This document shows positions 19,890 to 61,966 of a DNA stretch of 64,000 nucleotides, in pieces. Positions within the stretch are counted from its first letter, which is position 1. Each line of letters starts with the position of its first letter. The stretch is taken from positions 124,001-188,000 of IMG/VR virus record IMGVR_UViG_3300032931_001151; one strand, 5' to 3'. A program made the translations under genes and the position numbers. Under the pieces are notes generated by a model. The model did no database searches. It was not told the DNA's origin and was given only the letters and a program-made list of their open reading frames with translations.

Positions 19890-19935
19890 TAATGTTTTCC
19901 TTTTTTGGTCTATAGATATATTATAAATCCAAAAT

Positions 19936-19967
19936 AAAAAAGGCAAGGGTTTTATCCCCTGCCTTTT
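19936..19967 (-). terminator. Intrinsic terminator after the major capsid gene
   Basis: AAAAGGCAAGGG/CCCCTGCCTTTT stem with U-tract on the minus strand. Confidence 0.75.
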
Positions 19968-19996
19968 CTAACTTACTACTATCTAACTATTTAGAA

Positions 19997-21352
19997 TCAG
20001 TAGAGACTACCGGCCAACGATGAAGCGGTTAAGCCACGAACGTCGATGTAACGATAGTATAATTCTGAACCAAAGAGGTTGTTAGCGATGGCATAACGTG
20101 TCATTACGCCGACTCTTGGTTGGAATTCTTCTTGACCGACTGCACGGCTGAACATGAGGGGGATGTATGGGCAGTAGATTAATCCTGCGTCATTGTCCTT
20201 TGGTCCCTTATATCCAACTACGGCATAATCGTTAACAGCGAACATATCACGGTAGACCGTGAAGCGTCCGATGGTTCCGACTTTAGCAACGCCCGAGGTT
20301 TCGGTTGCAAGGTTGGTGGCAACACTTGAAATTGCGAATTGTGCAAGAGATTCTAGAGCGGCGATAACGCCAGGTGAAGCGAGAATAAAGTTACCAGCGC
20401 CTCTACGGGTTGATTGAGCGATTTCGTTAGAAGCCTTCAAGCAAGTGGTGTAGAGGGTACGGAACTTCTCTTGTTCCCAACGACCATCAGCTGAACCAAC
20501 TTGGTTCGCTTGGTAGTTCCAAACGAGAACGCCGCCAACTTGACCGATGGCGATGAGGTTATTCTTAACTTCAGCGTCAATTTCGGCTGAAACTTCATAA
20601 GCAAGCAAGTCGGTCATCTCTTCTTCGATGTCGACTCCGTGCATATGAGCCAAGTCTTGTTGAGCTTCAAGTGACCAACGAGCTTTGAGCTTACGAGTCT
20701 TAGCTCTGATCTCTTGTTGTTCAACTGAGAGACTCATCTCTCTCATTTGCATTGCACCATTGTATAGTGCGGCATTGGTGTCAACTCCACCTGGGAAGTT
20801 ACCAGTCGCAAGACGTTGCTCAGTGTTGAGTAATTCGCCTTGTTCTGTTGAGTAGCCCCACTTGTTTTGTTGTGCGTTATCTCCACCAACGATATTGGAG
20901 GTTGCTCCAAAGTCGGATGATGTAGGAACGGTTGGGCCAGCGCCAGCGTTTGCTGAGGCGGGATTTGAACCAGAGTACAACGAGTAAACGGTGTTATATC
21001 CAGCTTCGGCTCCGGCAGTTGCGCCGCCGCCGGTTGAGGCGTAGCGATAGCGTAGAGCATAAGCTAGACCAACTGGGGTACTCATGGGCTGAACGCCAAC
21101 GAGGTCATTGGATACTAATTCTGGGAATACACGAGCAACGAGAGGCATAACGATGGGCTTGAATTGAGCCACGCCTTGACTATTGAAGCCAGGTCCGTTA
21201 TTTCCAGCGGTTGAGGATGTACCCGCAGCTTCTGCGAAGTATTTGGTTTGAGCTTCAAGAAGTTTGCTGGTGATTACACGCTTACGCTCGCTCTTGATGT
21301 GCTTGGTCATTGGTGCCCATTTTTCCATGAGCTTTTCGGTTGCTTTCGACAT
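19997..21352 (-). CDS. gp23: Major capsid protein gp23
   Basis: 'LVGVQPMSTPVGL', 'AKTRKLKARWSLEAQQDL', 'YCPYIPL', 'FQPRVGVMTRY'; probable maturation site FAE41|A. Confidence 0.97.
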   Translation of the reverse strand: MSKATEKLMEKWAPMTKHIKSERKRVITSKLLEAQTKYFAEAAGTSSTAGNNGPGFNSQGVAQFKPIVMPLVARVFPELVSNDLVGVQPMSTPVGLAYALRYRYASTGGGATAGAEAGYNTVYSLYSGSNPASANAGAGPTVPTSSDFGATSNIVGGDNAQQNKWGYSTEQGELLNTEQRLATGNFPGGVDTNAALYNGAMQMREMSLSVEQQEIRAKTRKLKARWSLEAQQDLAHMHGVDIEEEMTDLLAYEVSAEIDAEVKNNLIAIGQVGGVLVWNYQANQVGSADGRWEQEKFRTLYTTCLKASNEIAQSTRRGAGNFILASPGVIAALESLAQFAISSVATNLATETSGVAKVGTIGRFTVYRDMFAVNDYAVVGYKGPKDNDAGLIYCPYIPLMFSRAVGQEEFQPRVGVMTRYAIANNLFGSELYYRYIDVRGLTASSLAGSLY

Positions 21353-21394
21353 TTGAAATATCTCCTTTAGAGAGGTTGTTTGTTGTTTATAACT

Positions 21395-22537
21395 TTAGTT
21401 GTCCTTGGACATTCTAATTTGACGATTTAGTGTTCCTGCCCATTCTGCCATTTCTGGATTTTGGGATATTACACCTTCGGAAAGGATCTCAGCTTTAAGT
21501 TTTTCAACTTTCTTTTGAGCGGCCTCGCCTAACACGACCGGTTTTTTCTCAACGGGTTTAGATTCACTTGAGGTTATTGGGCGACTTGGTGCGCTTTCAG
21601 TAAGGATAATATCCTTAATTGCAGCGAACTTGTCTTCCATTTCTTCAGCCTTGTAAGACTCAAGAACCTTTTGTGTTTTTCTTCTTTGGGCAACGGTCAT
21701 GCCCTCAGTTAATTCAAAGAGTTTGGCTTTCTTTTTCAACTCTTGAACTTCCGATGTTAGATGAACAATGTCCTTTGTTTTAGCATTTACGCTTTCGGAC
21801 AACTTTTCATTTGCTACCTGTGCTTCCTTGACAAGTTTATATGAAGCATCATCTAGTTTGATATAATTCTTACCAAATGTTGCTACTATACCCTCAACAA
21901 GTGGCTCATAAGCAGCCAATTTTGTTGCAGACTCCATAATACTTTCAGGAATTGATTTCTTAAGTTCCGATTCCAAGAATGCGGATACTTTTTCAACCAT
22001 TTCTTCCTTAAATGCACCAACCTCTTCTTGCAAGGTCTGCTCTTGCTTACTTGAATGGTTTCCGGCTTCCTCAAGGACTACGGATTCCAAAACTTGTTTG
22101 TAATTTCCAGCTTCTTCCATTACAATAGATTCAAGACTTGATTTGTAAGAAGCGGCTTCTTCCGCAACTATCTTCTCAAGTGATTCTCTATATGTTGAAG
22201 CTTCTGTACGAATAGTATTTTCCACTTCTTCACGATATCCATTTACTTCCTCAAGCATAATGGCTTCTTTAGCTACCATTGCTTCTGCTAACTCTTTAGC
22301 AAAATTTTGTGCTTCGGATTTTAGAATTGCTTCTTTTTCTTCAAATTGATTCTTTAAATCTTGAGCAGCTTCAAGAAGAGTTGCTTCATTTTTAGCACTC
22401 TCCTCTACTATAGCCTTTGCTCTTGCTTCAACCAATTGGTTGATTAAAGATTCAGTATGTGTTCGAACTTCATCCGATTGAAGTTTCTCGGTAATTCCGA
22501 GATTCTCGAATAGTTTTTCTATAACTGTTTTTTCCAT
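21395..22537 (-). CDS. gp22: Prohead core (scaffold) protein gp22
   Basis: Glu-rich coiled coil between gp21 and gp23; 'LTEGMTVAQRRK'. Confidence 0.8.
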   Translation of the reverse strand: MEKTVIEKLFENLGITEKLQSDEVRTHTESLINQLVEARAKAIVEESAKNEATLLEAAQDLKNQFEEKEAILKSEAQNFAKELAEAMVAKEAIMLEEVNGYREEVENTIRTEASTYRESLEKIVAEEAASYKSSLESIVMEEAGNYKQVLESVVLEEAGNHSSKQEQTLQEEVGAFKEEMVEKVSAFLESELKKSIPESIMESATKLAAYEPLVEGIVATFGKNYIKLDDASYKLVKEAQVANEKLSESVNAKTKDIVHLTSEVQELKKKAKLFELTEGMTVAQRRKTQKVLESYKAEEMEDKFAAIKDIILTESAPSRPITSSESKPVEKKPVVLGEAAQKKVEKLKAEILSEGVISQNPEMAEWAGTLNRQIRMSKDN

Positions 22538-22558
22538 ACTAGAGTCTCCTAATAATTA

Positions 22559-22566
22559 TATTTATA
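22559..22566 (-). promoter_or_regulatory. Late promoter (gp22/gp23)
   Basis: TATAAATA; a TATAAACA variant lies at 21384-21391 before gp23. Confidence 0.7.
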
Positions 22567-24324: not shown

Positions 24325-24353
24325 ATATAAAACTCCTTGTGACTATTTAATAT

Positions 24354-24361
24354 TATTTATA
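24354..24361 (-). promoter_or_regulatory. Late promoter
   Basis: TATAAATA upstream of 24324. Confidence 0.7.
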
Positions 24362-24374
24362 TAGATGATATGAA

Positions 24375-25985: not shown

Positions 25986-25987
25986 AT

Positions 25988-26596: not shown

Positions 26597-26613
26597 AGAA
26601 TCCTCCAAATATC

Positions 26614-26621
26614 TATTTATA
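26614..26621 (-). promoter_or_regulatory. Late promoter (gp2/portal)
   Basis: TATAAATA upstream of 26596. Confidence 0.7.
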
Positions 26622-26644
26622 ATAAATAACATTTAGGAGAAATT

Positions 26645-27995: not shown

Positions 27996-28033
27996 TGGAA
28001 TTCCTTTTCAATAGGATATATCCAAAAACAAAA

Positions 28034-28066
28034 AAATAAAGGGAGCCAATTAGGCTCCCTTTATTT
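28034..28066 (-). terminator. Intrinsic terminator
   Basis: AAATAAAGGGAGCC/GGCTCCCTTTATTT stem. Confidence 0.8.
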
Positions 28067-38553: not shown

Positions 38554-38563
38554 AAGAATTATG

Positions 38564-38592
38564 TTGAAGAATATGTTTTTGGATTGTATAAT
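38564..38592 (+). promoter_or_regulatory. Sigma70-type promoter facing a long non-coding region
   Basis: TTGAAG-N17-TATAAT. Confidence 0.65.
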
Positions 38593-38597
38593 GAATA

Positions 38598-39110
38598 GGT
38601 CGCTCTTTAAAACTATCTTATCTAATGGAGATATAAAAGTACATTAGAGATTTTTAGACATCATTTTTATTAAAATGATTCCACGATGCTACATATAAGG
38701 TTATTATTATCCTTATATTCTGGAGAGAAGGGTTGGAGATCCTGTAGTATGGTACGCTAGTGATAGTCTACCCAACAAATTGCTTTGACGGTAATCATAT
38801 AGTTTAATTGATTACTAACACGCAAAAAAAATAAATTATACATAAAACTAATCAAAGTATAACTCCGCAACTTAGGAGTTTATTACCTCTACTTAAGCTA
38901 AAATCTTCTTTAGTGGCTACTAATTAACCAAAGTGGTGGAAGTAACTAAAAAGAAATAAAAGTTCGTGTAACTTGAAATAACTAGTAAAAAGCCTTCTTA
39001 AAAGAAAATGTAAATAAAATAACACGGAAGGATTTTAAGGAAGAATTGTTTTTAATTTTGTTTTATATAATAGATAATAAAAAACCACCATATTGTGTAT
39101 GGTGGTTTAA
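38598..39110 (+). ncRNA. Candidate structured non-coding RNA (or transcription-activated origin)
   Basis: About 510 nt without a credible ORF, downstream of a promoter, with multiple hairpins; family not recognised. Confidence 0.35.
39082..39108. terminator. Terminator hairpin (best U-tract on the minus strand; possibly bidirectional)
   Basis: AAACCACCATA/TATGGTGGTTT stem. Confidence 0.75.
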
Positions 39111-39131
39111 TTTAATAAATATGTTAATGTA

Positions 39132-40952
39132 TTATATAATTTTATCTATTGAAGTAAATTCATTCTTTTTAATTAAATGTATAATACTATCAAATATTTC
39201 TTCACCCAGTTCTTTTTTATGTGAAATAATGTAAATACATTTATCAGGACAATTAGTTTTAAATCCATTCTTTAAATGCTCTAAAAATGATTCGGCTCCT
39301 ACGGTATCCAATGATGTATCAAGTACTTCATCAAGTACTAATATATTTGTATCAATTGAATTTCTCTCTTTTGATACATCCATTAAAGCAAGAAGTAATG
39401 CTAAATCTATTCTTTTCTTTTCTCCACCAGAAAACGACTCGTATGATCTTATATCTTTATTTCTTGCTATTAATTTTTCTTTTAGTTCACTATCAAACGT
39501 AATAGTATAATCGGAACCTAACATTGATAAGTAAAAATTAACTTTTTTGTTCAAAATAGGTAATACTTTCATCGTTACATATTTTCTTACACCATCTTCT
39601 CCAAGTAAACCTCTAATAAATTTATTGTACTTAAAGTCTTTTTGGGCAATATTAAATTTTTCTTCGGCTAATTTAACTAAATTTTCTAATTTATTATATT
39701 CTTGTTGGGATATAATCTCTTTTATTTCAAGTTTTCTTTTAATTTCTCTTTCTAAGTTATCATTAGAATTTTTAATTGACATTTCTAATTCACGAATTTT
39801 ATTTTTAGCCATTCGTAATTTATCAACATTATCTTCAAGTTTTGAAATTTTTTCTGTTATTAATTTTGAATTTGTATAACATTCGTTAATAAATGTAGTA
39901 TATTCATTAATTTTTTTATTTAAGTCGTTAACTTTAAGTTTTAAATTATTAACATATTCGGTAATTAATGGATTATTGGTTGAAGTTTGGCATAGCGGAC
40001 AATGTTCCGTATGTTCAAGTTTAGCCAATACACTATTATTCATTTTTATTTCTGTTTCTAATTTTGATTTATCATTAATATAACCATTTCGTTTAATTGT
40101 AATATCATTAAGTTCTTTCTTCAATGTATGAAGTAAATCATCAAAATTGACATCTTTAATTTTTTCTTCTATCTTATTTTTATTAATTTCAAATGATTGT
40201 ATTTCATCTTTTAAATCTTGAATTCTTTTTTGTTTATCCGTTTCAAACTTCAAAGTTTCAATAAGCAATGACTCTCTTCTATCTTTAGTTAAAGAAAGAG
40301 TATTAACCGCATTCTTTAGATCATTTTCAAGTACTGTTATATCACTTTTGGCATTTAGATGTTTAGTTTTAGCCTTATCACTCATTCTTCCATAGATTGA
40401 AAGAGATAGAATGTCTTCTAACACCGATCTTTTAGATGCAGGATCCATACTTAAAAATGGTACAGAGTGGTTTACATTTAAAATAATCATATTAGTGAAG
40501 CAAGTAAAACTAATTTTTATTTTTTCTTCAAGTAACGATTGGGTGTGTTTAATACTGTCCAATTGAATTTCATTGTCATCTTCCCAAACATCTGGGTTAA
40601 TTTCCCAATCCTTTATATCCTTTTCCCAAATTTTCAATAAATTCGGTTTAATTCCTCTTTCGATTTTATAAGCTTTATCTCCAATTTTGAAAGTTCCACT
40701 TAATAAACATCCATCACCATTTGTAGTATTAATAATTTCATCTTTATTAATATTTCTTAATGTTTTACCATAAAGTAAGTATGTTAACGATTCGGCTAAT
40801 AAAGTAGTTTTACCAATACCATTTCTTATAGTAGTATTTGGGACTAAATTGCCGGTTACAGCATGTATTCCCGGAGTATATTTGAAGGTTGTTGGAATAT
40901 TTCCAAAAGATAGAAAGTTTTGGATAGTTATATCAATGAACTCTAATTTCAT
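39132..40952 (-). CDS. gp46: Recombination endonuclease subunit gp46 (Rad50/SbcC-like)
   Basis: 'QNFLSFGN', Walker A 'NGIGKT', zinc hook 'CPLC', 'FSGGEK', 'LDEVLD'. Confidence 0.95.
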   Translation of the reverse strand: MKLEFIDITIQNFLSFGNIPTTFKYTPGIHAVTGNLVPNTTIRNGIGKTTLLAESLTYLLYGKTLRNINKDEIINTTNGDGCLLSGTFKIGDKAYKIERGIKPNLLKIWEKDIKDWEINPDVWEDDNEIQLDSIKHTQSLLEEKIKISFTCFTNMIILNVNHSVPFLSMDPASKRSVLEDILSLSIYGRMSDKAKTKHLNAKSDITVLENDLKNAVNTLSLTKDRRESLLIETLKFETDKQKRIQDLKDEIQSFEINKNKIEEKIKDVNFDDLLHTLKKELNDITIKRNGYINDKSKLETEIKMNNSVLAKLEHTEHCPLCQTSTNNPLITEYVNNLKLKVNDLNKKINEYTTFINECYTNSKLITEKISKLEDNVDKLRMAKNKIRELEMSIKNSNDNLEREIKRKLEIKEIISQQEYNKLENLVKLAEEKFNIAQKDFKYNKFIRGLLGEDGVRKYVTMKVLPILNKKVNFYLSMLGSDYTITFDSELKEKLIARNKDIRSYESFSGGEKKRIDLALLLALMDVSKERNSIDTNILVLDEVLDTSLDTVGAESFLEHLKNGFKTNCPDKCIYIISHKKELGEEIFDSIIHLIKKNEFTSIDKII

Positions 40953-42033: not shown

Positions 42034-42102
42034 ATCCTATCCCCTTATCTATAGTTCCATTTGTTAATTATAGGTCCAAGAAACGGGGATAAAAATGAAA
42101 TA

Positions 42103-42558
42103 TTAAAGGTCTTCGGCAATAGAAAATGATAATTTTTGAAGAGATACTTTATCTTGATTTTTAATTAAGGCGTCTTTAACCTTACTTTGATGTTTCTCTT
42201 TGTACATAACTTGAATAAATGCTCTTACTATTATAGTAGTACAGTAGCTAAAAGCATCGGTTGGTTTTCCCTCTCTCGTTTTTCTAGTTGGATCGTAATT
42301 ATGACTATATTTTAGAAGATGTAATAGAGCCGTCCCTTCCATATCAGATTTATACGTATAGTCTTTAAAATTATGGGCACTTGATACTCTAGATACATGT
42401 AACATGAATAATTCACCAAGTCTATCGGTGGCTTTACCAGTTTTAGTATATTTTATCAATTCATTAGAATATTCGTCTTTATCAATATAATACCGTGATT
42501 CGTCAGAGAACGTTCTTCTTTTTCTTAGAATAATTCTCTTCTTTTCTTTTTTGGACAT
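42103..42558 (-). CDS. gp55: Late transcription sigma factor gp55
   Basis: 'NFKDYTYKSDM', 'KYSHNYDP', 'AFSYCTTIIVRAF...KEK'; synteny 55-47-46. Confidence 0.88.
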   Translation of the reverse strand: MSKKEKKRIILRKRRTFSDESRYYIDKDEYSNELIKYTKTGKATDRLGELFMLHVSRVSSAHNFKDYTYKSDMEGTALLHLLKYSHNYDPTRKTREGKPTDAFSYCTTIIVRAFIQVMYKEKHQSKVKDALIKNQDKVSLQKLSFSIAEDL

Positions 42559-42585
42559 ATAATATCTCCTTATAGATTTAACTAT

Positions 42586-44143: not shown

Positions 44144-44203
44144 TTTCTATTTTTGATTTTGGATTTATATTATGGTCATCACCTAATGAAAAGGAGTATA
44201 TGT

Positions 44204-44593
44204 ATGGGTAAAAAACCTAACGACGTTGAAGAAGATAAGAAACCACCAAAACCAAAGAAAATTTTTATGTTAACATATGAATTTTGGGACGATGGCGAAG
44301 TGACTTGTTCTAGAATAGAAAAGGTCCCTCAAGAAAGAGGTGCTCCAAAAAATCTTCCTTATTTTGAAGAGAATAAATTAGATTTTGTTACTTCTCTTAA
44401 GTCAAGGTTGGCCAAGGATAAATATGAAATTTTCCAAGAGGTTATAAAAGCAATTTCAATAACGGAAGATGAAATTAAGCATTTTTATGCTCCAACTACA
44501 AAAAAAGTAATGACCAAAGAGGACGCTGATATAGTTAGCGAAGTTAACAAAAAAGATTCTAAAGTAGATGGGTTTGATTTTGAAGAAAAATGA
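44204..44593 (+). CDS. Hypothetical protein
   Basis: Start at 44204 after SD AAGGAG. Confidence 0.6.
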   Translation: MGKKPNDVEEDKKPPKPKKIFMLTYEFWDDGEVTCSRIEKVPQERGAPKNLPYFEENKLDFVTSLKSRLAKDKYEIFQEVIKAISITEDEIKHFYAPTTKKVMTKEDADIVSEVNKKDSKVDGFDFEEK

Positions 44594-44600
44594 AATAATT

Positions 44601-44670
44601 TAAAATTATTTAAAATTATTTAAAATTATTTAAAATTATTTAAAATTATTTAAAATTATTTAAAATTATT
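44601..44670. repeat. Perfect tandem repeat (TAAAATTATT)x7
   Basis: Seven exact 10-bp copies read directly from the sequence. Confidence 0.95.
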
Positions 44671-44671
44671 T

Positions 44672-44708
44672 AAATAAAGGGGAAGTAAATCTTCCCCTTT
44701 ATTTTTTT
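44672..44708 (+). terminator. Intrinsic terminator upstream of the DNA polymerase gene
   Basis: AAATAAAGGGGAAG/CTTCCCCTTTATTT stem followed by a T-run. Confidence 0.85.
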
Positions 44709-44773
44709 GTTCTTGGATGTTAAATAGGTAATACATCAAGACGAAACCCCGTCTTACTCAATAGGATATAAAA

Positions 44774-49094: not shown

Positions 49095-49167
49095 TTTATC
49101 CTCATTTTAGTGATACCAAGTTTGTATTGGTTTTTGGATTTATGTGCGATATAATAACTACAATTCA

Positions 49168-49192: not shown

Positions 49193-50350
49193 ATGGCTAG
49201 AAAATCATCCACCCCAGAAGATGGCGAAGCAAAACAAAGTAAGTCTTTAATTGCAGATTTCTTAAAGAAATCACAAATAAAAGGACTTGAAATGGCGAGT
49301 GTGTTAAGCACTAGTCTTCTTTCAAACGTGTCGGAATGGGTTAGTACCGGTAGTCTATCTCTTAATAAGATAATATCTGGTGATATCTATAAAGGTTTAC
49401 CAAGAGGTAGAATTATGGCCTTTGCTGGACCTTCTGGTGTCGGTAAAACCTATTTACTTATGTCTTCAGCAAGAGAAGCTCAAAAACAAGGATATACTAT
49501 ATTAGTATTAGATTCGGAAAACGCTTTTGACGCTGACTCTTTTCGAAGACTCGGCGGAAATCCTGACGAGGTTCTGCATTTCCCGGTTATAACTGTTACG
49601 GAGTGCCGTAATAAATGTGTTCAAATAATGGACGAATGGATGAAACTTCATCCCGAGTCAAAGTTGTTTATTATAGTGGACTCATTAGGTGGACTAACTA
49701 CGGAAAAGGTATTTGAAGATATAGAAAAGGATGAAGGTAAGGCCGACATGGGTAATAGAGCCAAACAACTTCGTGAGATGGCTAAAGTATTCACTAATTA
49801 TATTGCCAAGCATCAAGCTATCATGATCGTTTCCAATCACACGTATGAGCAACCACCCCCAAATCCAAAAATGCCACCCGTTGTTAAATTTGGTGGCGGT
49901 GAGGGATTTGTATATGCTACTTCTGGCATAGTATTCTTAAAAAAGAGTCAAATCCGTGAAGAAGAAGTTGACGCTCAAGGCAATTCCGTTAAGGTTAAAA
50001 AGGGAAATATTCTCAAAGCAACCGCTGAAAAAAATAGATTCGTCCCAGAAGGCATGGTTGGGGAGATTTATCTTTCGTTTGAAACCGGACTTAATAAGTG
50101 GTATGGATTACTTAATGATGCGCTTGAAGCACAATTAATAACTGAGCCGTCTCAAGGTTGGTATCACTTTGCACACCAAGAAGGCAATGTTAGAAAGAAA
50201 GAATTATATAAAACGGCAAATTGGGTTGGATTAATTGATAAGTTGGCTGAACATATTAGAAATAAATACAAATATACCAAATTTACTACCGATGAAGAGA
50301 TTGAGGCTACCTTGGGGTCAGTAGAAAAAGAAGAAGATAAAGGCGATTGA
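49193..50350 (+). CDS. uvsX: RecA-like recombinase UvsX
   Basis: 'STGSLSLN', 'GLPRGRI', 'GPSGVGKT', 'LDSENA', 'VDSLG', 'ADMG', 'SNHTY'; start at 49193 by SD. Confidence 0.93.
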   Translation: MARKSSTPEDGEAKQSKSLIADFLKKSQIKGLEMASVLSTSLLSNVSEWVSTGSLSLNKIISGDIYKGLPRGRIMAFAGPSGVGKTYLLMSSAREAQKQGYTILVLDSENAFDADSFRRLGGNPDEVLHFPVITVTECRNKCVQIMDEWMKLHPESKLFIIVDSLGGLTTEKVFEDIEKDEGKADMGNRAKQLREMAKVFTNYIAKHQAIMIVSNHTYEQPPPNPKMPPVVKFGGGEGFVYATSGIVFLKKSQIREEEVDAQGNSVKVKKGNILKATAEKNRFVPEGMVGEIYLSFETGLNKWYGLLNDALEAQLITEPSQGWYHFAHQEGNVRKKELYKTANWVGLIDKLAEHIRNKYKYTKFTTDEEIEATLGSVEKEEDKGD

Positions 50351-50375
50351 CATATAGTTATTTTGGAACTATAGT
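50347..50375 (+). promoter_or_regulatory. Sigma70-type promoter for the helicase gene
   Basis: TTGACA-N17-TATAGT. Confidence 0.75.
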
Positions 50376-50405: not shown

Positions 50406-51833
50406 GTGTCGGACAACAATATTCAATATTATATTTTAAACGGGCTTCTATCAATAGAAGATTATGCGTCTAAATATATTGATAAAATAGATGCCTCGCA
50501 TTTTGCAATAGAAATGCGACCAATTATAAAGGGGATTCAGAAGTTCCATTTAAAGAACTTGAAAATCCCCTCAATTGGCATCCTTATTGATAGAGTTATT
50601 CCAGTAATTACGAAAAATGATCCAGAGCAACAACAAAAATGTGAAGATATAATTCAATCCGCAATGGCTATTGAGTTTAAGAAAAATGACTTTTATGATT
50701 GGTTAAAAACGGAAACTAATGAGTTTATCAAGAAACAACGAGTTATTGATGCTTTGATGAAAGCCGTAGATATTGTAAATAACGGTGACGTGGACGAAGC
50801 CAAAAAACTAATGGATGAGGCTTATCAAATTACATTTGATGATAATCTCGGATTAGATTATTTTGGAAATTTAGAAGATAGAATGAAAAGACTTAAAACT
50901 GGAGCAAACATAATTAATACTGGATTAGAAATACTTAATAATATGATTGGTGGTGGTTGGAGAAATAAGTCATTAATAGTGTTTGGTGCTGGAACTAACG
51001 TAGGTAAAACTCTAATTTTAAGTGATATATCATTTAAGTTAATAAAGCAAGGTCTTAACGGATTATATGTAACTCTTGAAATTTATGAAGATAGTTTGGC
51101 GAATAGAATAGATGCTAATTTATCTAATATTGAATTAAGTGAGTTACCTTCAAATGTTGATTATTTAATGCAAAAAATATTAGAAGAAAAGAAAAACGCC
51201 GAAGCTTCGGGTAATCCGTTTGGAAGATTTATTATCAAAGAATTCCCACCTGGCATTAATTGTAATACTATTCTTTCTACCATTAGAGAATTAAATCTTA
51301 AACAAGGATTTAAACCGGATTTCCTTGTGATAGATTATATTGGATTATTGGCTCCAAATGGAAAAACTGCCGATAATTCTTTTACGGATTTAAAGAAAGT
51401 ATCGGAACAAGTTAGAACTCTATCGTCAATGTTGAATATTCCCGTATTTACCGCCCAACAAACAAATCGTGATAGTTACGGGTTGAGTGAAATCGGACTT
51501 GAATCCACCTCGGAATCAATGGGTATACCTTTTACCGCCGATATTATGATTATGTGTTCACGGACGAAAGATATGGAAGAAGAAAATCAAATGTATTGGT
51601 ATATAGCCAAGAGTAGATTTAGTAAAAATAACGTTGGATTCTTTGTAAATGTTGAATATCCATATATGAGAATATCTGAAACTAACGTATCTATCCAAAA
51701 TATATCCCAAAATGTATCTACAAAACCCAAGGCTGAAAAAAGAAAAGTTGAAGTAAACTTTTCTTCTCATTCCCCAAATATTAGCGGAGGCATAGATGAA
51801 ACCGAAGAATGGACAAAGACAATTAACTTATGA
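50406..51833 (+). CDS. gp41: Replicative DnaB-like helicase gp41
   Basis: 'AGTNVGKT', 'YVTLE', 'IIKEFP', 'VIDYIGL', 'TAQQTNR', 'SESMG', 'KSRF'. Confidence 0.93.
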   Translation: MSDNNIQYYILNGLLSIEDYASKYIDKIDASHFAIEMRPIIKGIQKFHLKNLKIPSIGILIDRVIPVITKNDPEQQQKCEDIIQSAMAIEFKKNDFYDWLKTETNEFIKKQRVIDALMKAVDIVNNGDVDEAKKLMDEAYQITFDDNLGLDYFGNLEDRMKRLKTGANIINTGLEILNNMIGGGWRNKSLIVFGAGTNVGKTLILSDISFKLIKQGLNGLYVTLEIYEDSLANRIDANLSNIELSELPSNVDYLMQKILEEKKNAEASGNPFGRFIIKEFPPGINCNTILSTIRELNLKQGFKPDFLVIDYIGLLAPNGKTADNSFTDLKKVSEQVRTLSSMLNIPVFTAQQTNRDSYGLSEIGLESTSESMGIPFTADIMIMCSRTKDMEEENQMYWYIAKSRFSKNNVGFFVNVEYPYMRISETNVSIQNISQNVSTKPKAEKRKVEVNFSSHSPNISGGIDETEEWTKTINL

Positions 51834-52086
51834 CGAAATAGCTCGTAAGTACGATATGACCCCCGCCAAAGCACATTCGGTGGTCAAACAAGCATACAAT
51901 AAAATGGTCAAAGCATTGATAGAAAGAGAAAAAATAAATATTTTTGATGCAATTTTAGCACTTCGAGAATATTTTAATATGTCAGAGCAAGAAGCATATG
52001 ATAAACTAACCGACGAACATAAAGAATTATTAAAAGAATATGCTATAAAAGAGTTTGATATAAGATCAAAGAAAGGCAAGGCGTAA
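51796..52086 (+). CDS. Late transcription co-activator gp33-like with N-terminal sigma4-like HTH
   Basis: C-terminal half 'INIFDAILALREYFNMSEQEAYDKLTDEHKELLKEYA' is gp33-like; T4 synteny 33-59-32; SD GGAGG. Confidence 0.55.
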   Translation: MKPKNGQRQLTYDEIARKYDMTPAKAHSVVKQAYNKMVKALIEREKINIFDAILALREYFNMSEQEAYDKLTDEHKELLKEYAIKEFDIRSKKGKA

Positions 52087-52689: not shown

Positions 52690-52778
52690 AAATAAAGAAT
52701 GAGTTGGGAATGTTTCCCGATTTCTATATCTAGTTAGAAGTATCTAACGTATCCAATATATCCCAAAAGGAAATATCC

Positions 52779-53777: not shown

Positions 53778-53814
53778 AATAAAGGGGTGCTCAATTGAGT
53801 GCCCCTTTATTTTT
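53778..53814 (+). terminator. Intrinsic terminator after gp32
   Basis: AATAAAGGGGTGCTC-AATT-GAGTGCCCCTTTATTTT. Confidence 0.8.
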
Positions 53815-53826
53815 GAAAGGAACTAA

Positions 53827-54852
53827 ATGGATAAAGTTTTAATATTGACTGGAATGGCCGGATTTATAGGAATGAATGTATTAAAAGAAATGGCAAAAGA
53901 TGAAAATTTTATAAAATCATATAAAGATGTAATTTCTATAGATAAAATGGGATATGCTACCAAATATAACGATGCCGAATATAAAAAAATATGCGATTTG
54001 CATTGTATTAATATAATTAACATAAATATTAACGATTTACCTAAATCTAAATATAAATTAGAATATAAAGACGTTAAATATGATATTTTAGATATGGCTT
54101 CAGAATCGCATGTTGACAATAGCATACTAGATCCCTTTTCAATATATAATCAAAATACATCAATACCAGCAAAGTTACTTGAGTGGATTGGAAAAGAAAA
54201 TTGGAAAAATATTGGAACATATTACCATATTAGCACTGACGAAATATACTCAGAAATACCTTTAAATAAAGTAAATGATGATAAAAATTGGTTTAAAATC
54301 GATGACTCATTTAAGCCGAACAACCCATATTCAGCGTCAAAGGCGGCACAAGATTGTTTCTTAATAGCAATGAGACATACCTTTGGGTTAAATGTCAAAT
54401 TTATTAGGATGGCGAATCAAGTTGGCACATTCCAACATATAGAAAAAATGGTTCCCGCAAGCACATTAAGAATTTTAAAAGGCGAGGCTATAAAGATTTA
54501 TGGAGAGGGATTAAATGTCCGTCAATGGACCCCTGTTAATGTGACGGCTAAAATAATAGTTGATATATTAAGAGAAAAAGTTATCTTTAATGATATATTA
54601 CACATTGCTTATAGATACGGGATATATAACAATAATGAAATTTCAAATTTGATATCGGAATGCATGTTAGACTTTGGGTATAATGCTAAAATAGAATATA
54701 TTGAAGATAGATTGGGGCATGATTCCGCATACGCATTGGATACAACTCCAATAGTTGATGAATATTTTGAAGAAATAATAAACTTCAAAGACTACTTAAA
54801 ATCAACTATTGAGTTCTATGTTAAAAATAAAGAATTATATTTAGGAAAATAA
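53827..54852 (+). CDS. rmlB: dTDP-glucose 4,6-dehydratase
   Basis: 'GMAGFIG', 'DKMGYA', 'ASESHVDNSI', 'ISTDE', 'YSASK', 'GEGLNVRQW', 'DRLGHD'. Confidence 0.9.
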   Translation: MDKVLILTGMAGFIGMNVLKEMAKDENFIKSYKDVISIDKMGYATKYNDAEYKKICDLHCINIINININDLPKSKYKLEYKDVKYDILDMASESHVDNSILDPFSIYNQNTSIPAKLLEWIGKENWKNIGTYYHISTDEIYSEIPLNKVNDDKNWFKIDDSFKPNNPYSASKAAQDCFLIAMRHTFGLNVKFIRMANQVGTFQHIEKMVPASTLRILKGEAIKIYGEGLNVRQWTPVNVTAKIIVDILREKVIFNDILHIAYRYGIYNNNEISNLISECMLDFGYNAKIEYIEDRLGHDSAYALDTTPIVDEYFEEIINFKDYLKSTIEFYVKNKELYLGK

Positions 54853-54853
54853 A

Positions 54854-56152
54854 ATGAAAACCGTAGCACATAAAAATATACATAATTGGTGGGATGGAAA
54901 AGTTATTATTGATGAAGTTAGGGAATATATAGACGATCGAGGATCGTTGACGGAATTGTGGAGAACTGATGACGAGGTAATGTGCGAAGACCCATATTGC
55001 CCGCAAATGTCATATTGGTCAATAACAAAGCCATATGTAATGCGTGGAATGCATCAGCATTCAATGGCTCAATGTGACTGGTTCTATACTTTCAAAAGTA
55101 AAATGGTGTATCAATTATATAACGAAGAAACTAAAGAGATGCGATGCTATTTCACCAATCCTAATGCTATAACAAGAGTTAAAGTGTCGCCCCCTATAAT
55201 TCACGGATATAGATCCCTAGAAAATAGAGATATAGTTACCGCAAATTTCCCATCTTCGCTATTCATGGGGGAGAATAAAAAAGAACCGATTGATGAAATT
55301 AGATGGGAAGATAAATTTAAGGATGTACCCGTAGTCTTCATTTTTGGCGCTAATGGTAGATTGGGTAAAGCTTTAACAAAATCTTTTTTTGATAATATGG
55401 GGTTTTGTACTTATGAGGTAGTTCCATGCTATGAGAAACTTAATAGTGTTGAAGAAGTTTCAAAATTGTTTAAGACACTTGAGGCATTGTTTAAAGGTAG
55501 AAAACTATATTTCTTTAATTGTGCTGCGCTAACAAATGTTCAAGATAAAAATACACTTTTTGATATTTGGGAATGGGCTAATGCTAAAATGCCATCATAT
55601 ATGGCAAACTATTGCGTTGCCAATGATTGGAAATTTATAGGGTTTAGCACGGATTATATATATCAAAATAGCGAAGAAACTAAAAATAATTATACGTTAT
55701 CAAAGAAGTTATTTGAGAAATTAATTGAGACTAATTCAAGAAATGATGGGATATCTATATTAAGAGTAGCAAATCTCTATTCAAAAGACCCTAATGATGT
55801 TCATAATGCCATTATTAAGTTTTGTAATGTTATAAAATCGTGTAAAGAAGCAACTATAGACCCAAAATTAAGTATATTCCCAACAAACGTAGAAATATTA
55901 TCTTTTAAAATTGTTGGATTATTTAAAAATTCATCATTTGATCATATGGATTGCAAGTATTTCAATATAATACCGAAAAAATATAAACTTGATAATTTTA
56001 TATCCACGTTCTTTCCTAACACTCCGATTAAAACTATTGACTCTAAATTAACTCCGTGGGATATAAAATTTGAAACCGATAAAGAGCCAATTAAATTAAA
56101 TATAGGTCAATCGGAAAATGCCATCCAAAATATAATTTCATTAAATAGTTAG
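54854..56152 (+). CDS. rmlCD: Fused dTDP-4-dehydrorhamnose 3,5-epimerase / reductase (RmlC-RmlD)
   Basis: RmlC cupin: 'DDRGSLTELW', 'VMRGMHQH', 'IHGY'. RmlD: 'GANGRLG', 'NCAALTNV', 'STDYIY', 'YTLSK'. Confidence 0.85.
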   Translation: MKTVAHKNIHNWWDGKVIIDEVREYIDDRGSLTELWRTDDEVMCEDPYCPQMSYWSITKPYVMRGMHQHSMAQCDWFYTFKSKMVYQLYNEETKEMRCYFTNPNAITRVKVSPPIIHGYRSLENRDIVTANFPSSLFMGENKKEPIDEIRWEDKFKDVPVVFIFGANGRLGKALTKSFFDNMGFCTYEVVPCYEKLNSVEEVSKLFKTLEALFKGRKLYFFNCAALTNVQDKNTLFDIWEWANAKMPSYMANYCVANDWKFIGFSTDYIYQNSEETKNNYTLSKKLFEKLIETNSRNDGISILRVANLYSKDPNDVHNAIIKFCNVIKSCKEATIDPKLSIFPTNVEILSFKIVGLFKNSSFDHMDCKYFNIIPKKYKLDNFISTFFPNTPIKTIDSKLTPWDIKFETDKEPIKLNIGQSENAIQNIISLNS

Positions 56153-56165
56153 AATGTCATATTAG

Positions 56166-56173
56166 TATAAATA
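56166..56173 (+). promoter_or_regulatory. Late promoter for the lipoprotein gene
   Basis: TATAAATA 22 nt upstream of the ATG. Confidence 0.7.
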
Positions 56174-56194
56174 CTAGTAAAAGGAATTACTATT

Positions 56195-57037: not shown

Positions 57038-57059
57038 AAAATAAATAATTTTATTTATT

Positions 57060-57097
57060 AAAACTCTAGTTAGAAATAACTAGAGTTTTTCTTTTTT
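57060..57097 (+). terminator. Intrinsic terminator
   Basis: AAAACTCTAGTTA/TAACTAGAGTTTT stem plus T-run. Confidence 0.75.
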
Positions 57098-57128
57098 GGA
57101 TATAGTATAGAGGTATATAGGAGATATT

Positions 57129-59009: not shown

Positions 59010-59064
59010 ACTACTTTTATTCTATGATTTTGGACTTACGATGTGGGTATAAGGAGTTTATAAA

Positions 59065-59838
59065 ATGAGTGAATTTAATATACAAGCGACTCTTACGGAT
59101 AAACAAGCAAAGGACTTTTTTACTCCATTAAACGATATTTTGAGAAATTGTGGCCAAAAAGTTGTAATTAGATTTTTCAAAGAGAAGAAAATAATTATTA
59201 AGACTATTACTGAGCAACGAGATTTAATTCAATTTGTTAACTATAATGATAGTATTTCTTCTCTTTTCAATATAGAGAATGATTATAGAACTGGAATTTA
59301 TGACTTAAGTGAATTTGTTAATCTTTTCAAGATATTTGACACGGGATTAGATTTTAAGTATCACGCAAATGAGAAAAAAATAGAGTTAAGCAATAATGTT
59401 AACGGTGAGGATCAATCCCTTCAATACTATATTTGCGACGAAACTGTAGTCCCAAAGCCACCCGAAGGCATTGATTTTTCGAAGATTACATGGTCCACTT
59501 CATTTGTTTGGAATATCTCTAAATACGATACTCTTTTTAATGCAATGAAGAGTCTTAAATATCCCAATATAATTATAGTAGGAAAGAAGGACGAAAAGCA
59601 TCTAACGGTTTCAATTACCGAAAGTGATATCAAAACTACTACTTTTAAATCAAAGATAAATCTTGATGCTCCTATAGTATCAAGCTTCAATATAATTGTT
59701 GATAAGGCTAAATTCATCAACATAGTATCAAGTAGTATAAAAGAGTTTAATATTAATATATGTGAAAGATTGCTACATTTCAAGGGGAAGTCTGACATTT
59801 GTGATGTAGAATATATGCTTTCACCTTTGAAGAAATGA
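59065..59838 (+). CDS. gp45: Sliding clamp gp45
   Basis: 'GIYDLSEFVNL' motif; immediately upstream of the clamp loader. Confidence 0.75.
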   Translation: MSEFNIQATLTDKQAKDFFTPLNDILRNCGQKVVIRFFKEKKIIIKTITEQRDLIQFVNYNDSISSLFNIENDYRTGIYDLSEFVNLFKIFDTGLDFKYHANEKKIELSNNVNGEDQSLQYYICDETVVPKPPEGIDFSKITWSTSFVWNISKYDTLFNAMKSLKYPNIIIVGKKDEKHLTVSITESDIKTTTFKSKINLDAPIVSSFNIIVDKAKFINIVSSSIKEFNINICERLLHFKGKSDICDVEYMLSPLKK

Positions 59839-59848
59839 GAAATATAAT

Positions 59849-60748
59849 ATGTCCGATTTACTTGTAGAAAAATATAGACCTACTACTTTATCCGATATTA
59901 TTCTATCGGAACAACTTAAAGAGAAGTTTAAAGAATATATTGACCAAAAGTATATTCCTCACATACTTTTAAATGGGCCACCGGGAATAGGGAAAACTAC
60001 GATAGCTAAAATACTAGCTAAAAGTATAACCGAAGATTATTTATTTGTATGTGCGAGCGATCACAATTCGGTTGAGGATATTCGTGGTAAAGTAAAAGGG
60101 TTTTGTATTACGATGGGATTCTCAAAATTTAAAATAGTTATTCTAGATGAATGTGATGCCATATCATTAAATGGCCAAATGATGTTGAGAAATCTAATGG
60201 AAGAGTTTCATGAAACTTGTAGGTTTATATTGACTTGTAATCTTGGAGAGAAAGTTTTAGATGCCGTGAAATCTAGATGTCAATCTTTTGATTTAGTTGC
60301 CCCGGATATGAAAAGTGTTGCTATGAGATGCATGGAGATATTAAAGAGTGAAAATATAAAATGTGATAATAAAGAAGATATTAAATCATTAGTAAAGAGA
60401 TTTTACCCAGATATTAGAAGAGTAATTAATAACTTACAAAAGATGACTACTAACGGGGAGTTTAAATATACAGAATCAAAATCGTTGGAAGACCAAGATA
60501 TACTAATAGAATCTTTAAAAAATGGAGATTTAAAAAAGATATACAAAGAAATTCTCGGCCCTGGTTGCGATTATATATCATTATATAGAATTCTTTTTGA
60601 TAGATGCGACGAGATATCGGAGAGCCAAAAGATAGAAATTATGTTAATTGTTGGCGATTTTCATAAATATCACGGATTGGTAATTGATCCACAGATACAT
60701 TTTAAGACTTGTTTACTAACTATCGCTAAATTAATATTCAAAAAGTAA
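59849..60748 (+). CDS. gp44: Clamp loader large subunit gp44
   Basis: 'VEKYRP', 'GPPGIGKTT', 'ILDECD', 'FILTCN', 'SRC', 'PDIRRVIN'. Confidence 0.95.
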   Translation: MSDLLVEKYRPTTLSDIILSEQLKEKFKEYIDQKYIPHILLNGPPGIGKTTIAKILAKSITEDYLFVCASDHNSVEDIRGKVKGFCITMGFSKFKIVILDECDAISLNGQMMLRNLMEEFHETCRFILTCNLGEKVLDAVKSRCQSFDLVAPDMKSVAMRCMEILKSENIKCDNKEDIKSLVKRFYPDIRRVINNLQKMTTNGEFKYTESKSLEDQDILIESLKNGDLKKIYKEILGPGCDYISLYRILFDRCDEISESQKIEIMLIVGDFHKYHGLVIDPQIHFKTCLLTIAKLIFKK

Positions 60749-60818
60749 TAGTTTTGTGGTAGAATATACAATGGAATTTCTAAAAACTATAAAAAACTTC
60801 TTTAAAAGGACTTTAAAC

Positions 60819-61520
60819 ATGGAATTATATCTTGTTACTATTGATACAACTTTCTCTCAAAAATTAGGGAAGTCTTTGCAAAATTACGGCATTTGCTTGG
60901 CTAGTGATCCCAACAATGCACGAGAAAGATTTATACAACCTCTTCGTACAAGAGTTCCACCCAACGTTCTTGCAGATATATATCCATATGTATATGCCTA
61001 TAAATTGAGTGACATAACAGAAACAATTAATGACCAACATCCTATGTGGGCATATGTTTCTAATTCTCAAAATAGAAGCGTTGGACAACAAACAAAATAT
61101 CCATTTTTTGTACCAGTTCCTAATACAATAGAATCCCCGCCTCCAATTCAAGAAGTCCAACCTACCGCACCCCCAATTCCTATCGTTGAAGAGTTTAAAG
61201 CCCCCGATGGAGTAACGGATCCGGTCCAATTAGCTATGTTGAAGACTATGTATGATATGGCCAAAGAAATAAAGAGCTTAAAATCCGCTCCTTCCAACCC
61301 TCAAACAGGCTCAAAAGTATCAATACTTGATTTGGAGTCCCAATTTCGTGCACCACCTCCAGCATCTATTATGCCGGGGTCTTCACCTCTTAATGTTAAT
61401 TCTATACCCGTTCCACAAGTTCCACATGTTACTTCATTTCCTAAAGGAAAAATTGACCGTGAAACGAAAGCAAGGTTAGAACAAAATATGCGACCAAGTA
61501 ACTTTGAAGTTATAGATTGA
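60819..61520 (+). CDS. Hypothetical Pro-rich protein inserted between gp44 and gp62
   Basis: SD AAGGA before ATG at 60819; TGGTAGAAT upstream. Confidence 0.6.
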   Translation: MELYLVTIDTTFSQKLGKSLQNYGICLASDPNNARERFIQPLRTRVPPNVLADIYPYVYAYKLSDITETINDQHPMWAYVSNSQNRSVGQQTKYPFFVPVPNTIESPPPIQEVQPTAPPIPIVEEFKAPDGVTDPVQLAMLKTMYDMAKEIKSLKSAPSNPQTGSKVSILDLESQFRAPPPASIMPGSSPLNVNSIPVPQVPHVTSFPKGKIDRETKARLEQNMRPSNFEVID

Positions 61521-61531
61521 TATAATAAATT

Positions 61532-61966
61532 ATGGCAAAGCGTGAAGGACTATCAAAGCAAATAAAAGAGAAGCCAACAAATTATCTTTTTGAAATTTTA
61601 AATGATATTAAAGTTTATAAAAAAGGTAATTTGTTGGATATTTCGGAGTATGAAAGAGCATTTGATAAGTTTATAATTATGAAGTTTCTTTCTATGAATG
61701 ACGAAATTTGTGAAATAATTAATTATGTTAATGATTTTCATGATATTTTATCTAAAAAACAACTTTATAAATTACTAATTGAAATAGTTCCTATCACAAA
61801 ATCATATGACCCGTATATAAAGTCGGATGTTGAGGTTATTGAAGATGGGGCAAAGAAAGTTGCGGAATATTACGAATGTTCTCTTAAAGATGCTAATGAA
61901 TATATAAAAATTATGGGGTCAGATTGGTTAGTGCTTTTAAATGGAAAATTTGGACGTACAATATAA
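61532..61966 (+). CDS. gp62: Clamp loader small subunit gp62
   Basis: 'FDKFIIMKFLSM', 'VAEYYECSLKDANEYI'. Confidence 0.8.
   Translation: MAKREGLSKQIKEKPTNYLFEILNDIKVYKKGNLLDISEYERAFDKFIIMKFLSMNDEICEIINYVNDFHDILSKKQLYKLLIEIVPITKSYDPYIKSDVEVIEDGAKKVAEYYECSLKDANEYIKIMGSDWLVLLNGKFGRTI

What the first reader, a model, noticed from the sequence alone, without database searches (positions are those of the whole stretch)
19920..61962. Recurring TTGGA-N2-TAnnnT promoter-like motif before non-late genes
Seen just upstream of eight gene starts: TTTGGAttTATAAT (19933-19920, Hef), TTTGGAtaTATCCT (28026-28013, rnh), CTTGGAccTATAAT (42080-42067, gp47), TTTGGAttTATATT (44158-44171), TTTGGAacTATAGT (50362-50375, gp41), TTTGGAtaTAGTAT (57095-57108, topoisomerase), TTTGGActTACGAT (59029-59042, gp45), TTTGGAcgTACAAT (61949-61962, regA). 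A 3-nt-spacer variant precedes the non-coding region (38578-38592). It is distinct from the TGnTATAAT class and the TATAAATA late class, and unlike the T4 MotA box. Inference: an undescribed middle-promoter element or an unusual host sigma specificity, which could also help identify the host.
Basis: partly seen in the sequence, partly recalled or inferred. Interest (0 to 1): 0.6.

Follow-up and report, generated by a model that had tools for sequence, protein, structure and literature searches.

The report
Novel promoter box in T4-like phage
An uncultured, deep-branching T4-like phage places a conserved TTTGGA box two bases ahead of an ordinary -10 element in front of its DNA-replication genes; this looks like a previously undescribed substitute for T4's "middle" promoters, but it rests on sequence evidence only.

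Summary
All eight listed sites and the 3-nt-spacer variant are at the stated coordinates.

- **Enrichment.** In the upstream regions of the 214-kb genome, TTGGA-N2-TAnnnT occurs 14 times on the sense strand, against 1.1 expected from shuffles.
- **Spacing.** The spacing histogram has one sharp peak, at 2.
- **Conservation.** The motif is kept at the same sites before topoisomerase II, gp45 and regA in six related metagenomic phages. It is also kept before gp41 in three of the four genomes that cover that region. The flanks there are almost randomised.
- **Downstream genes.** These are replication, recombination and nucleotide-metabolism genes, plus a homing endonuclease and RNase H embedded in late clusters. 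Two of these sites and the topoisomerase site follow a terminator.
- **Other promoter classes.** Canonical TTGAC-N17-TATAAT promoters fill the early region. TATAAATA marks late genes, and gp55 and a gp33 analog are present.
- **What was not found.** No MotA, AsiA, extra sigma or RNA polymerase gene was detected.
- **Sister clade.** It uses TTTGGC, mostly 12 bp from the -10. uvsX in this clade has TTGGA-N11.

Best reading: a clade-specific, -35-independent promoter class with a sigma70-type -10, probably read with help from an unidentified phage factor. Timing, transcription start sites, factor and host are all untested.

The parts
19920..19933 (-). TTTGGAttTATAAT, 30 nt before the start (19889) of the homing endonuclease gene, which lies directly after the major head protein gene. 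A terminator-like hairpin at 19942-19963 and a T-run sit immediately upstream.
28013..28026 (-). TTTGGAtaTATCCT, 17 nt before the RNase H-type exonuclease gene (start 27995). A hairpin at 28041-28059 and a T-run sit immediately upstream.
42067..42080 (-). cTTGGAccTATAAT, 33 nt before gp47 (SbcD-like; start 42033), followed by the next ORF (39132-40952; gp46 by position, not annotated here). It lies just after the gp55 gene.
44158..44171 (+). TTTGGAttTATATT, 32 nt before a 129-aa ORF of unknown function (44204-44593).
50347..50375 (+). gp41 helicase promoter. TTTGGAacTATAGT (50362-50375) lies inside the spacer of a full TTGACA-17-TATAGT promoter. The arrangement is conserved in L010 and L017; L009 has TTGGAacGATAGT.
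57095..57108 (+). TTTGGAtaTAGTAT, 20 nt before the topoisomerase II large subunit gene (57129), directly after the terminator at 57060-57089. The motif is kept at this site in all six close relatives.
59029..59042 (+). TTTGGActTACGAT, 22 nt before the gp45 sliding clamp gene (59065). The motif is kept at this site in all six close relatives.
61949..61969 (+). TTTGGAcgTACAAT (61949-61962), 43 nt before regA (62006). It lies in the last codons of the gp62-like gene and overlaps a late-type TATAAATA (61962-61969). The tandem pair is kept in the six relatives, with ATATAAATA adjoining in five.
49134..49155 (+). Distal variant TTGGA-N11-TATAAT before uvsX (start 49193). TTGGA-N11-TAnAAT is conserved in L009, L010 and L017.
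38578..38592 (+). TTTGGA-TTG-TATAAT, the 3-nt-spacer variant, at the head of a 580-nt stretch (38554-39131) with no convincing ORF.
42551..42563 (+). Possible extra site TTGGACATATAAT, 119 nt before the glycosyltransferase gene (42683). It overlaps the start codon of gp55 on the other strand. Not checked in relatives; may be chance.
44713..44725 (+). Degenerate variant TTGGAtgTTAAAT after the strong terminator at 44672-44704 and before the DNA polymerase gene (44774). The -10 is imperfect.
42103..42558 (-). gp55-like late sigma, the only copy in the genome. Context: the late machinery that reads TATAAATA.
51796..52086 (+). 96-aa gp33 analog. It has a sigma region 3.1/4.2-like helix-turn-helix, and its fold matches T4 gp33 on the RNA polymerase beta-flap. 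Context: it was considered and rejected as the box reader.

Best explanation
TTTGGA-N2-TAnnnT is a functional promoter class of this phage clade. The TAnnnT part is an ordinary -10 element read by the host's primary sigma factor. Only T-12, A-11 and T-7 are fixed, as in T4 middle promoters. There is no -35 element. Instead a TTTGGA box lies at about -20 to -15.

The class drives genes that T4 expresses before late transcription: the helicase, topoisomerase, clamp and clamp loader, regA, gp46/47, RNase H and a dUTPase. It also gives a homing endonuclease and the RNase H gene, both embedded in late clusters, their own transcription units after terminators.

Inferred, not shown: the box is read by an unidentified factor, most likely phage-encoded, or by a phage-modified host polymerase. 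This would give a middle-mode switch analogous to, but not homologous with, T4 MotA/AsiA. The same box can also act from about one helical turn further upstream (N11-12), which is roughly the position of the MotA box.
For: Shown:
- Enrichment and fixed spacing: 14 against 1.1 expected, with a single peak at spacer 2.
- Orientation: 14 sense against 3 antisense.
- Distance to the start codon: 17-43 nt at the eight listed sites.
- No information at the -35 position, apart from the gp41 site.
- The motif is found at the same sites before topoL, gp45 and regA in all six relatives with 68-82% topoisomerase identity, and before gp41 in two of the three relatives that cover it. The two spacer bases and the three inner -10 bases vary, and flank identity is 0.34-0.46 against 0.28 for random sequence.
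- At the regA site the T of TA is a wobble base. It is kept although the residue changes (R, T, S, I, C).

Class map:
- 28 TTGAC-N17-TATAAT sites, 24 of them in the 1.9-68 kb region of small ORFs, and 23 of the 28 with a perfect TATAAT.
- The TTGGA class is concentrated at 118-186 kb in the replication module, with a degenerate -10 (5 of 14 are TATAAT).
- 28 late TATAAATA sites.

Three sites directly follow terminator hairpins.

For a separate factor:
- The sister clade L011/L013/L014 uses TTTGGC, with spacing peaks at 12 (7 on the gene strand, 1 on the other) and at 2 (5 against 1). These sites precede gp45, gp32 and regA.
- This clade keeps TTGGA-N11 before uvsX in four genomes.
- The motif is absent from 2.7 Mb of other T4-like loci: 89 matches against 82 for the control.
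Against: - There is no transcript evidence at all: no run was listed, so transcription start sites and timing are unknown.
- No candidate reader was found. MotA_activ, MotCF, AsiA, Sigma70_r2 and Sigma70_r4 are all absent at E<=1. Thirty early proteins gave no transcription-factor domain. The one sigma-like HTH protein turned out to be a gp33 analog.
- A TGnTATAAT class also serves middle-type genes (gp55, uvsY). The box could therefore simply be a second kind of extended -10 that needs no factor.
- The sister-clade and N11 evidence rests on few sites, in about 20 kb per genome.
- The regA box overlaps conserved Phe-Gly codons.
- Gene starts in the full genome come from a home-made caller.
Confidence: 0.55

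Rival explanations
1. The host holoenzyme reads the promoter unaided. TTTGGA is an unusual proximal element of the extended -10 kind, contacted by the host's primary sigma (region 3) or by core polymerase. No phage factor and no temporal switch are needed.
For: - The box occupies the spacer segment next to the -10, where extended -10 contacts are made (established knowledge).
- The -10 has the primary-sigma signature TAnnnT.
- No phage factor was found.
- A parallel TGnTATAAT class serves similar genes.
- A few box sites lie in or next to the early region, at genome positions 10717, 61988 and 70545.
Against: - The box letter differs between sister clades, A against C.
- The box also occurs 11-12 bp from the -10. 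That distance does not fit a sigma region 3 contact.
- The early region relies on canonical -35/-10 promoters and hardly uses the box.
- The motif shows no enrichment in other T4-like loci, though their hosts may differ.
Confidence: 0.3
2. A phage-encoded sigma-like protein, not detectable by current profiles, replaces the host sigma and reads the whole 13-14 bp composite.
For: - T4-like phages do encode highly diverged sigma-like proteins. The gp55 here is not seen by Sigma70_r2.
- The composite has a rigid internal spacing.
Against: - Only one gp55-like gene was found, and it fits the late TATAAATA class.
- The T-12/A-11/T-7 pattern is that of primary sigma factors.
- The N11-12 variants argue against one rigid composite site.
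- No RNA polymerase genes were found.
Confidence: 0.07
3. The motif acts at the RNA level, as a processing site or translational operator in the 5' leader, and is not a promoter.
For: - It lies close to the start codons.
- The phage encodes RegA, a translational repressor.
Against: - Three sites sit directly after terminators, so they are outside the upstream transcripts.
- The distance to the Shine-Dalgarno sequence and the start codon varies from 17 to 43 nt, while the internal spacing is fixed.
- The conserved letters are exactly those of a -10 hexamer.
Confidence: 0.04
4. The pattern is a chance or compositional artefact of AT-rich intergenic DNA or of coding constraints.
For: - About 35 of the 52 genome-wide matches lie in coding sequence.
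- The regA box overlaps Phe-Gly codons.
Against: - 14 observed against 1.1 expected in composition-matched shuffles, and none of 500 shuffles exceeds 4.
- The spacing is sharp.
- The motif is retained at the same intergenic sites in seven genomes although the flanks are near random.
Confidence: 0.03

Closest known systems
T4 MotA/AsiA-dependent middle promoters, consensus (a/t)(a/t)(a/t)TGCTTtA-N11-13-TAnnnT (PMC1524935)
   Same: - A -10 of the TAnnnT type read by the host's primary sigma, and no -35 element.
- An extra upstream box.
- Placement before replication, recombination and nucleotide-metabolism genes.
- It coexists with canonical early and TATAAATA late classes.
- The distal variant (N11-12) puts the box at about the MotA-box position.
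   Different: - The box sequence is TTTGGA (TTTGGC in the sister clade), not TGCTT.
- In this clade the box usually sits 2 bp from the -10 (about -20 to -15), not at -30.
- No motA or asiA homolog is detectable.
- Middle timing is not shown.
Extended -10 (TGnTATAAT) promoters. From my own knowledge, this includes the -35-independent middle and late promoters of phages such as T5 and Thermus phage P23-45.
   Same: The extra element directly adjoins the -10 and stands in for a -35. The class could stay active if a phage protein disabled -35 recognition.
   Different: - The letters and register differ: G at -17/-16 and A at -15, instead of TG at -15/-14.
- This genome has a separate genuine TGnTATAAT class.
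- A distal placement of the same box exists.
T4 late promoters TATAAATA, read by gp55, gp33 and gp45
   Same: They are present in the same genome, with gp55 and a gp33 analog. At regA a late promoter overlaps the box promoter.
   Different: The sequence differs, and the gene set is different (structural genes).

Membership tests
T4 MotA-dependent middle promoter | MotA box (a/t)3TGCTTtA centred near -30, 11-13 bp upstream of the -10 | tested here: not met
   The box is TTTGGA and lies 2 bp from the -10 at 14 sites. Only uvsX and one other gene have it at N11.
T4 MotA-dependent middle promoter | Sigma70-type -10 of the form TAnnnT with weakly conserved inner positions | tested here: met
   T, A and the final T are invariant. 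The inner positions vary, and only 5 of 14 sites are TATAAT.
T4 MotA-dependent middle promoter | Phage encodes MotA and AsiA | tested here: not met
   PF09114, PF09158 and PF09010 give no match at E<=1 in the six-frame genome. Very diverged or analogous proteins are not excluded.
T4 MotA-dependent middle promoter | Activity after early and before or alongside late transcription | not testable with these tools
   No sequencing run was listed.
Extended -10 promoter | TG at -15/-14, one base upstream of the -10 hexamer | tested here: not met
   Position -15 is always A, and the two spacer bases are never in TGn register.
Extended -10 promoter | No requirement for a -35 hexamer | tested here: inconclusive
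   No sequence information at the -35 position, apart from the gp41 site. The functional requirement was not assayed.
Canonical sigma70 -35/-10 promoter | TTGACA-like hexamer 16-18 bp upstream of the -10 | tested here: not met
   Only the gp41 site has one (TTGACA-17-TATAGT). The generic scan finds none at the other sites.
T4-type late promoter | TATAAATA at -13 to -6 | tested here: not met
   The -10s of the box class are TAnnnT and not TATAAATA. The late motif is a separate class of 28 sites.
Sigma54 promoter | GG and GC separated by 10 bp (TGGCAC-N5-TTGC) | tested here: not met
   By inspection, no GC lies at the required distance, either in the TTGGA sites or in the sister-clade TTGGC sites.

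The most novel reading that the evidence does not exclude
A new, non-homologous counterpart of T4 sigma appropriation. An unidentified phage protein reads a TTTGG(A/C) box and recruits host polymerase, with the primary sigma on the -10. It acts from either of two positions about one helical turn apart (around -17 or -27). The box letter and preferred position have co-evolved with the factor between sister clades of an uncultured T4-like lineage.
Probability: 0.35. Interest if true: 0.75.

Novelty: new variant of a known kind. Interest (0 to 1): 0.55.

Why it matters
Outside T4, RB69 and 44RR, middle-mode transcription of T4-like phages is an open question. Most T4-like phages lack MotA and have no recognisable middle promoters (PMC1524935; PMC5780444).

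This lineage has less than 30% DNA polymerase identity to any phage in the searched collection of deposited phage genomes. Here it shows a clean, conserved, -35-less promoter class in front of exactly the genes that T4 drives from middle promoters. That makes the question testable:
- The box gives a bait for finding the reader protein.
- It gives a marker for annotating transcription units in related metagenomic phages.
- It allows comparison of two natural box variants and two box positions.

Tried and rejected
**Searches for relatives**
- DNA similarity to the collection of deposited phage genomes: no match.
- DNA polymerase by tblastn: best hits are cyanophages at 29.7% identity.
- Single-protein search of IMG/VR: nothing.
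- Profile searches of IMG/VR and of species genomes: only relatives at 37% identity or less, and no host clue.
- Metagenome scan: five short contigs at 55-64% identity.
Relatives could therefore be studied only over about 13-22 kb each.
- Cluster look-up gave no taxon names.

**Transcript evidence**
- Sequencing-run search: none was listed. Read laying was therefore not used, and there is no transcript evidence.

**Candidate readers**
- The 96-aa HTH protein next to gp41 looked promising. It has weak Sigma70_r4 hits, and its profile hits SigA regions 3.1 and 4.2. Its model best fits T4 gp33 on the beta-flap: 3tbi_A, TM 0.75 normalised to the target, rmsd 1.8 Å. It is also conserved in relatives that lack the motif. 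I rejected it as the likely reader.
- Pfam scan of 30 early-region proteins: no transcription factor.
- MotA, AsiA, sigma and RNA polymerase Pfam families: absent. The control for single-subunit polymerase was uninformative.

**Other**
- Sigma54 reading of TTGGC: the spacing does not fit.
- Literature searches for the motif found nothing relevant.
Full report
**What the window is.** The window is bases 124001-188000 of a 214.2-kb virus record with 33% G+C.
- It has no DNA match in the collection of deposited phage genomes.
- Its DNA polymerase is at most 29.7% identical to any phage polymerase there; the best hits are cyanophages.
- The gene content is T4-like: major head protein, portal, gp55, gp46/47-type nuclease, DNA polymerase, UvsX, gp41, gp32, topoisomerase II, gp45, gp44/62, RegA and UvsY.
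- It is therefore a deep-branching, uncultured T4-like phage. Its host is unknown.

**Checking the observation.**
- The pattern TTGGANNTANNNT occurs 15 times in the window, against 6.25 in shuffles.
- It occurs 52 times in the genome, against 11 for the reversed pattern.
- I called 251 genes with a simple caller based on codon usage and Shine-Dalgarno sequences. I then asked about the 90 nt before the starts. There are 14 sense-strand matches, against 1.10 +/- 0.99 in 500 dinucleotide shuffles (maximum 4). The antisense strand has 3.
- The spacing is sharp. Spacers of 0, 1, 2, 3 and 4 give 2, 5, 14, 0 and 3, and no other peak appears up to 25.
- Without any prior, TTGGA is the commonest 5-mer two bases before TAnnnT in upstream regions. 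ATTTTGGA also appears among the enriched upstream 8-mers.
- The site alignment shows T at the two positions before TTGGA in 80% of sites. A T-rich tract lies further upstream. There is no information where a -35 would lie.
- The generic sigma70 scan finds a -35 only at the gp41 site (TTGACA-17-TATAGT). There the box lies inside the spacer.

**Four promoter classes.** Upstream k-mer enrichment and inspection separate four classes.
- TTGAC(ttt)-N17-TATAAT: 28 sites. Twenty-four lie in the 1.9-68 kb region of small ORFs, and 23 have a perfect TATAAT.
- TGnTATAAT: before gp55, uvsY and others.
- TTTGGA-N2-TAnnnT: concentrated at 118-186 kb, with a degenerate -10.
- TATAAATA: 23 occurrences in the -70..-8 upstream windows against 0.3 expected, before structural genes.

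The late machinery is present. There is a single gp55-like sigma. There is also a 96-aa protein whose model matches T4 gp33 bound to the polymerase beta-flap.

**Which genes carry the box.**
- In the window: the homing endonuclease placed right after the major head protein gene, an RNase H-type exonuclease, gp47 followed by the next ORF (39132-40952; gp46 by position, not annotated here), a 129-aa ORF, gp41, topoisomerase II large subunit, gp45 (followed by gp44 and gp62), and regA.
- Elsewhere in the genome: a dUTPase/dCTP deaminase-like gene and several small ORFs.
- There is also an intergenic site at genome 210839 in the tRNA region. A match at 211910 there falls inside a called ORF.
- The endonuclease, RNase H and topoisomerase sites directly follow terminator hairpins with T-runs. 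They therefore head independent transcription units, the first two inside late gene clusters.
- At regA a late TATAAATA overlaps the last T of the motif.

**Conservation.** Close relatives are absent from the collection of deposited phage genomes, from IMG/VR and from the species genomes. The large protein collection did hold topoisomerase homologs at 57-82% identity, and I fetched their contigs.
- In the six relatives at 68-82% identity (L009, L010, L017-L020), TTGGA-NN-TAnnnT is present at the same place before topoisomerase, gp45 and regA in every genome.
- Before gp41 it is present in two of the three relatives that cover that region. The third, L009, has a near match.
- The two spacer bases and the three inner -10 bases vary freely.
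- Pairwise identity of the flanks is 0.34-0.46, against 0.28 expected at random.
- At regA the box lies in the last codons of the upstream gene. The T of TA is a wobble base, and it is kept while the residue changes.
- Because I located the sites by pattern, invariance of the eight fixed letters is by construction. The evidence is that the pattern is found at all 18 orthologous upstream regions. By chance it would be found in about 0.5% of such regions (derived).

**A sister variant and a second position.**
- In L011, L013 and L014 (57-67% identity) the strict motif is missing at these sites. TTTGGC appears instead.
- On the gene strand, the spacing to TAnnnT peaks at 12 (7 sites against 1 on the other strand). 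These lie before gp45 or its upstream neighbour in three genomes, before gp32 in two and before regA in two.
- A second peak is at 2 (5 against 1), including the L011 gp41 site.
- Two short marine or aquatic contigs have aTGGC-N12-TATAAT before the gp45 ortholog.
- In the window's own clade, uvsX carries TTGGA-N11-TAnAAT in all four genomes that cover it. One more intergenic N11 site exists.
- More distant relatives (L012, L015, L016) use other promoters at these positions.
- The pattern is not enriched in 2.7 Mb of other T4-like topoisomerase loci: 89 matches against 82 for the control.

**How it most likely works.** Shown: a conserved, oriented, fixed-spacing element with the letters of a primary-sigma -10 and an extra box, just upstream of non-late genes.

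Inferred: the -10 is read by the host's primary sigma. That sigma evidently reads ordinary -35/-10 promoters, because the phage's early region is full of them. The TTTGGA box replaces the -35.

Three facts fit a separate, fast-evolving reader better than a direct contact by the conserved host sigma:
- The box letter differs between sister clades.
- The box acts from 2 bp or from 11-12 bp, about one helical turn apart.
- The distal position roughly matches that of the T4 MotA box (GCTT at -30 to -27; PMC1524935).

- MotA, AsiA, further sigma domains and RNA polymerase genes are not detectable.
- Thirty early proteins gave no transcription-factor domain.
- The only sigma-like HTH protein is the gp33 analog. 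It is also present in relatives that lack the motif.

I put about 0.85 on 'functional promoter class'. Within that, I give a slight preference to factor dependence over unaided host holoenzyme.

**Comparison with what is known.**
- The class works like T4 middle promoters. It is not a member of that family: the box sequence and its usual position differ, and motA and asiA are absent.
- It also resembles extended -10 promoters in having its extra element next to the -10. The defining TG at -15/-14 is missing, however, and a true TGn class coexists.
- Published work states that MotA and middle promoters are confined to T4, RB69 and 44RR among the phages studied (PMC1524935). It also states that T4-like cyanophages lack middle promoters and motA/asiA (PMC5780444).
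- Literature searches for this motif found nothing.

**Limits.**
- There are no RNA data, no host, and only partial contigs of the relatives.
- The gene calls for the whole genome are my own.
- The evidence for the distal and sister-clade variants rests on about ten sites.

Noticed in passing
window 44598-44667, with terminator 44672-44704: A perfect 10-bp tandem repeat (ATTTAAAATT, seven full copies with a partial copy at each end). It lies between the 129-aa ORF and a strong bidirectional terminator, just upstream of the DNA polymerase gene. The helical phasing suggests bent DNA. The function is unknown.
   Followed up: partly
window 38554-39131: A 580-nt stretch without a convincing ORF. 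It is headed by TTTGGA-TTG-TATAAT and ends at a terminator-like hairpin near 39085-39108. The RNA fold has z = -2.36, and no Rfam family passes threshold. It may be a non-coding RNA.
   Followed up: partly
window 51796-52086: A 96-aa gp33 analog. Its N-terminal helix-turn-helix aligns to SigA regions 3.1 and 4.2, and the fold matches T4 gp33 on the beta-flap. Orthologs in L012, L013 and L015 end in an F..LF-type tail (clamp-binding-like). The proteins of this clade end in a basic tail instead.
   Followed up: yes
window 44738-44757: A small hairpin (AAGACG...CGTCTT) in the DNA polymerase leader, between the degenerate box site and the start codon. It may be a translational operator, as for T4 gp43. 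Not checked in relatives.
   Followed up: no
window 52690-52778; L009, L010: The gp32 leader is conserved between the window, L009 and L010, with repeated tatcc/atatcc words and no box promoter. It may be an autoregulatory operator.
   Followed up: no
window 60819-61520 and orthologs in L009-L020: A conserved ORF of 232-297 aa with no family match lies between the gp44 and gp62 clamp-loader genes in every relative. From my own knowledge, T4 has no gene there.
   Followed up: partly
window 53827-56152, and past the window's right end (seen in L009-L019): Sugar-nucleotide genes (epimerase/dehydratase, RmlD-like, DegT aminotransferase, NodZ-like, glycosyltransferases) are interleaved with replication genes and conserved across relatives. 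They may serve DNA or surface glycosylation.
   Followed up: no
genome 208273-214085 (outside the window; L030): A cluster of 18 tRNA genes. One has anticodon CUA (reported as tRNA-Pyl), that is, an amber-suppressor-like tRNA. An intergenic TTGGA-N2-TAnnnT site at 210839 lies in this region; a second match at 211910 is inside a called ORF.
   Followed up: partly
genome 1-20000 (L022): The early region encodes an Acb1 anti-CBASS homolog (11614-12156), a Macro domain protein (17169-17624), a nucleoside 2-deoxyribosyltransferase-like protein (16664-17158), a papain-like protease and a class 3 lipase.
   Followed up: partly
relatives P0008, P0010, P0016, P0021, P0030: Several related topoisomerases sit on contigs of 380-415 kb, about twice this genome's length. 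These may be concatemer assemblies or much larger relatives.
   Followed up: no
L016:2400-2480 and 6120-6196: In a distant relative the uvsX and gp32 leaders carry repeated AAGTA(A/C)A words instead of any box promoter.
   Followed up: no
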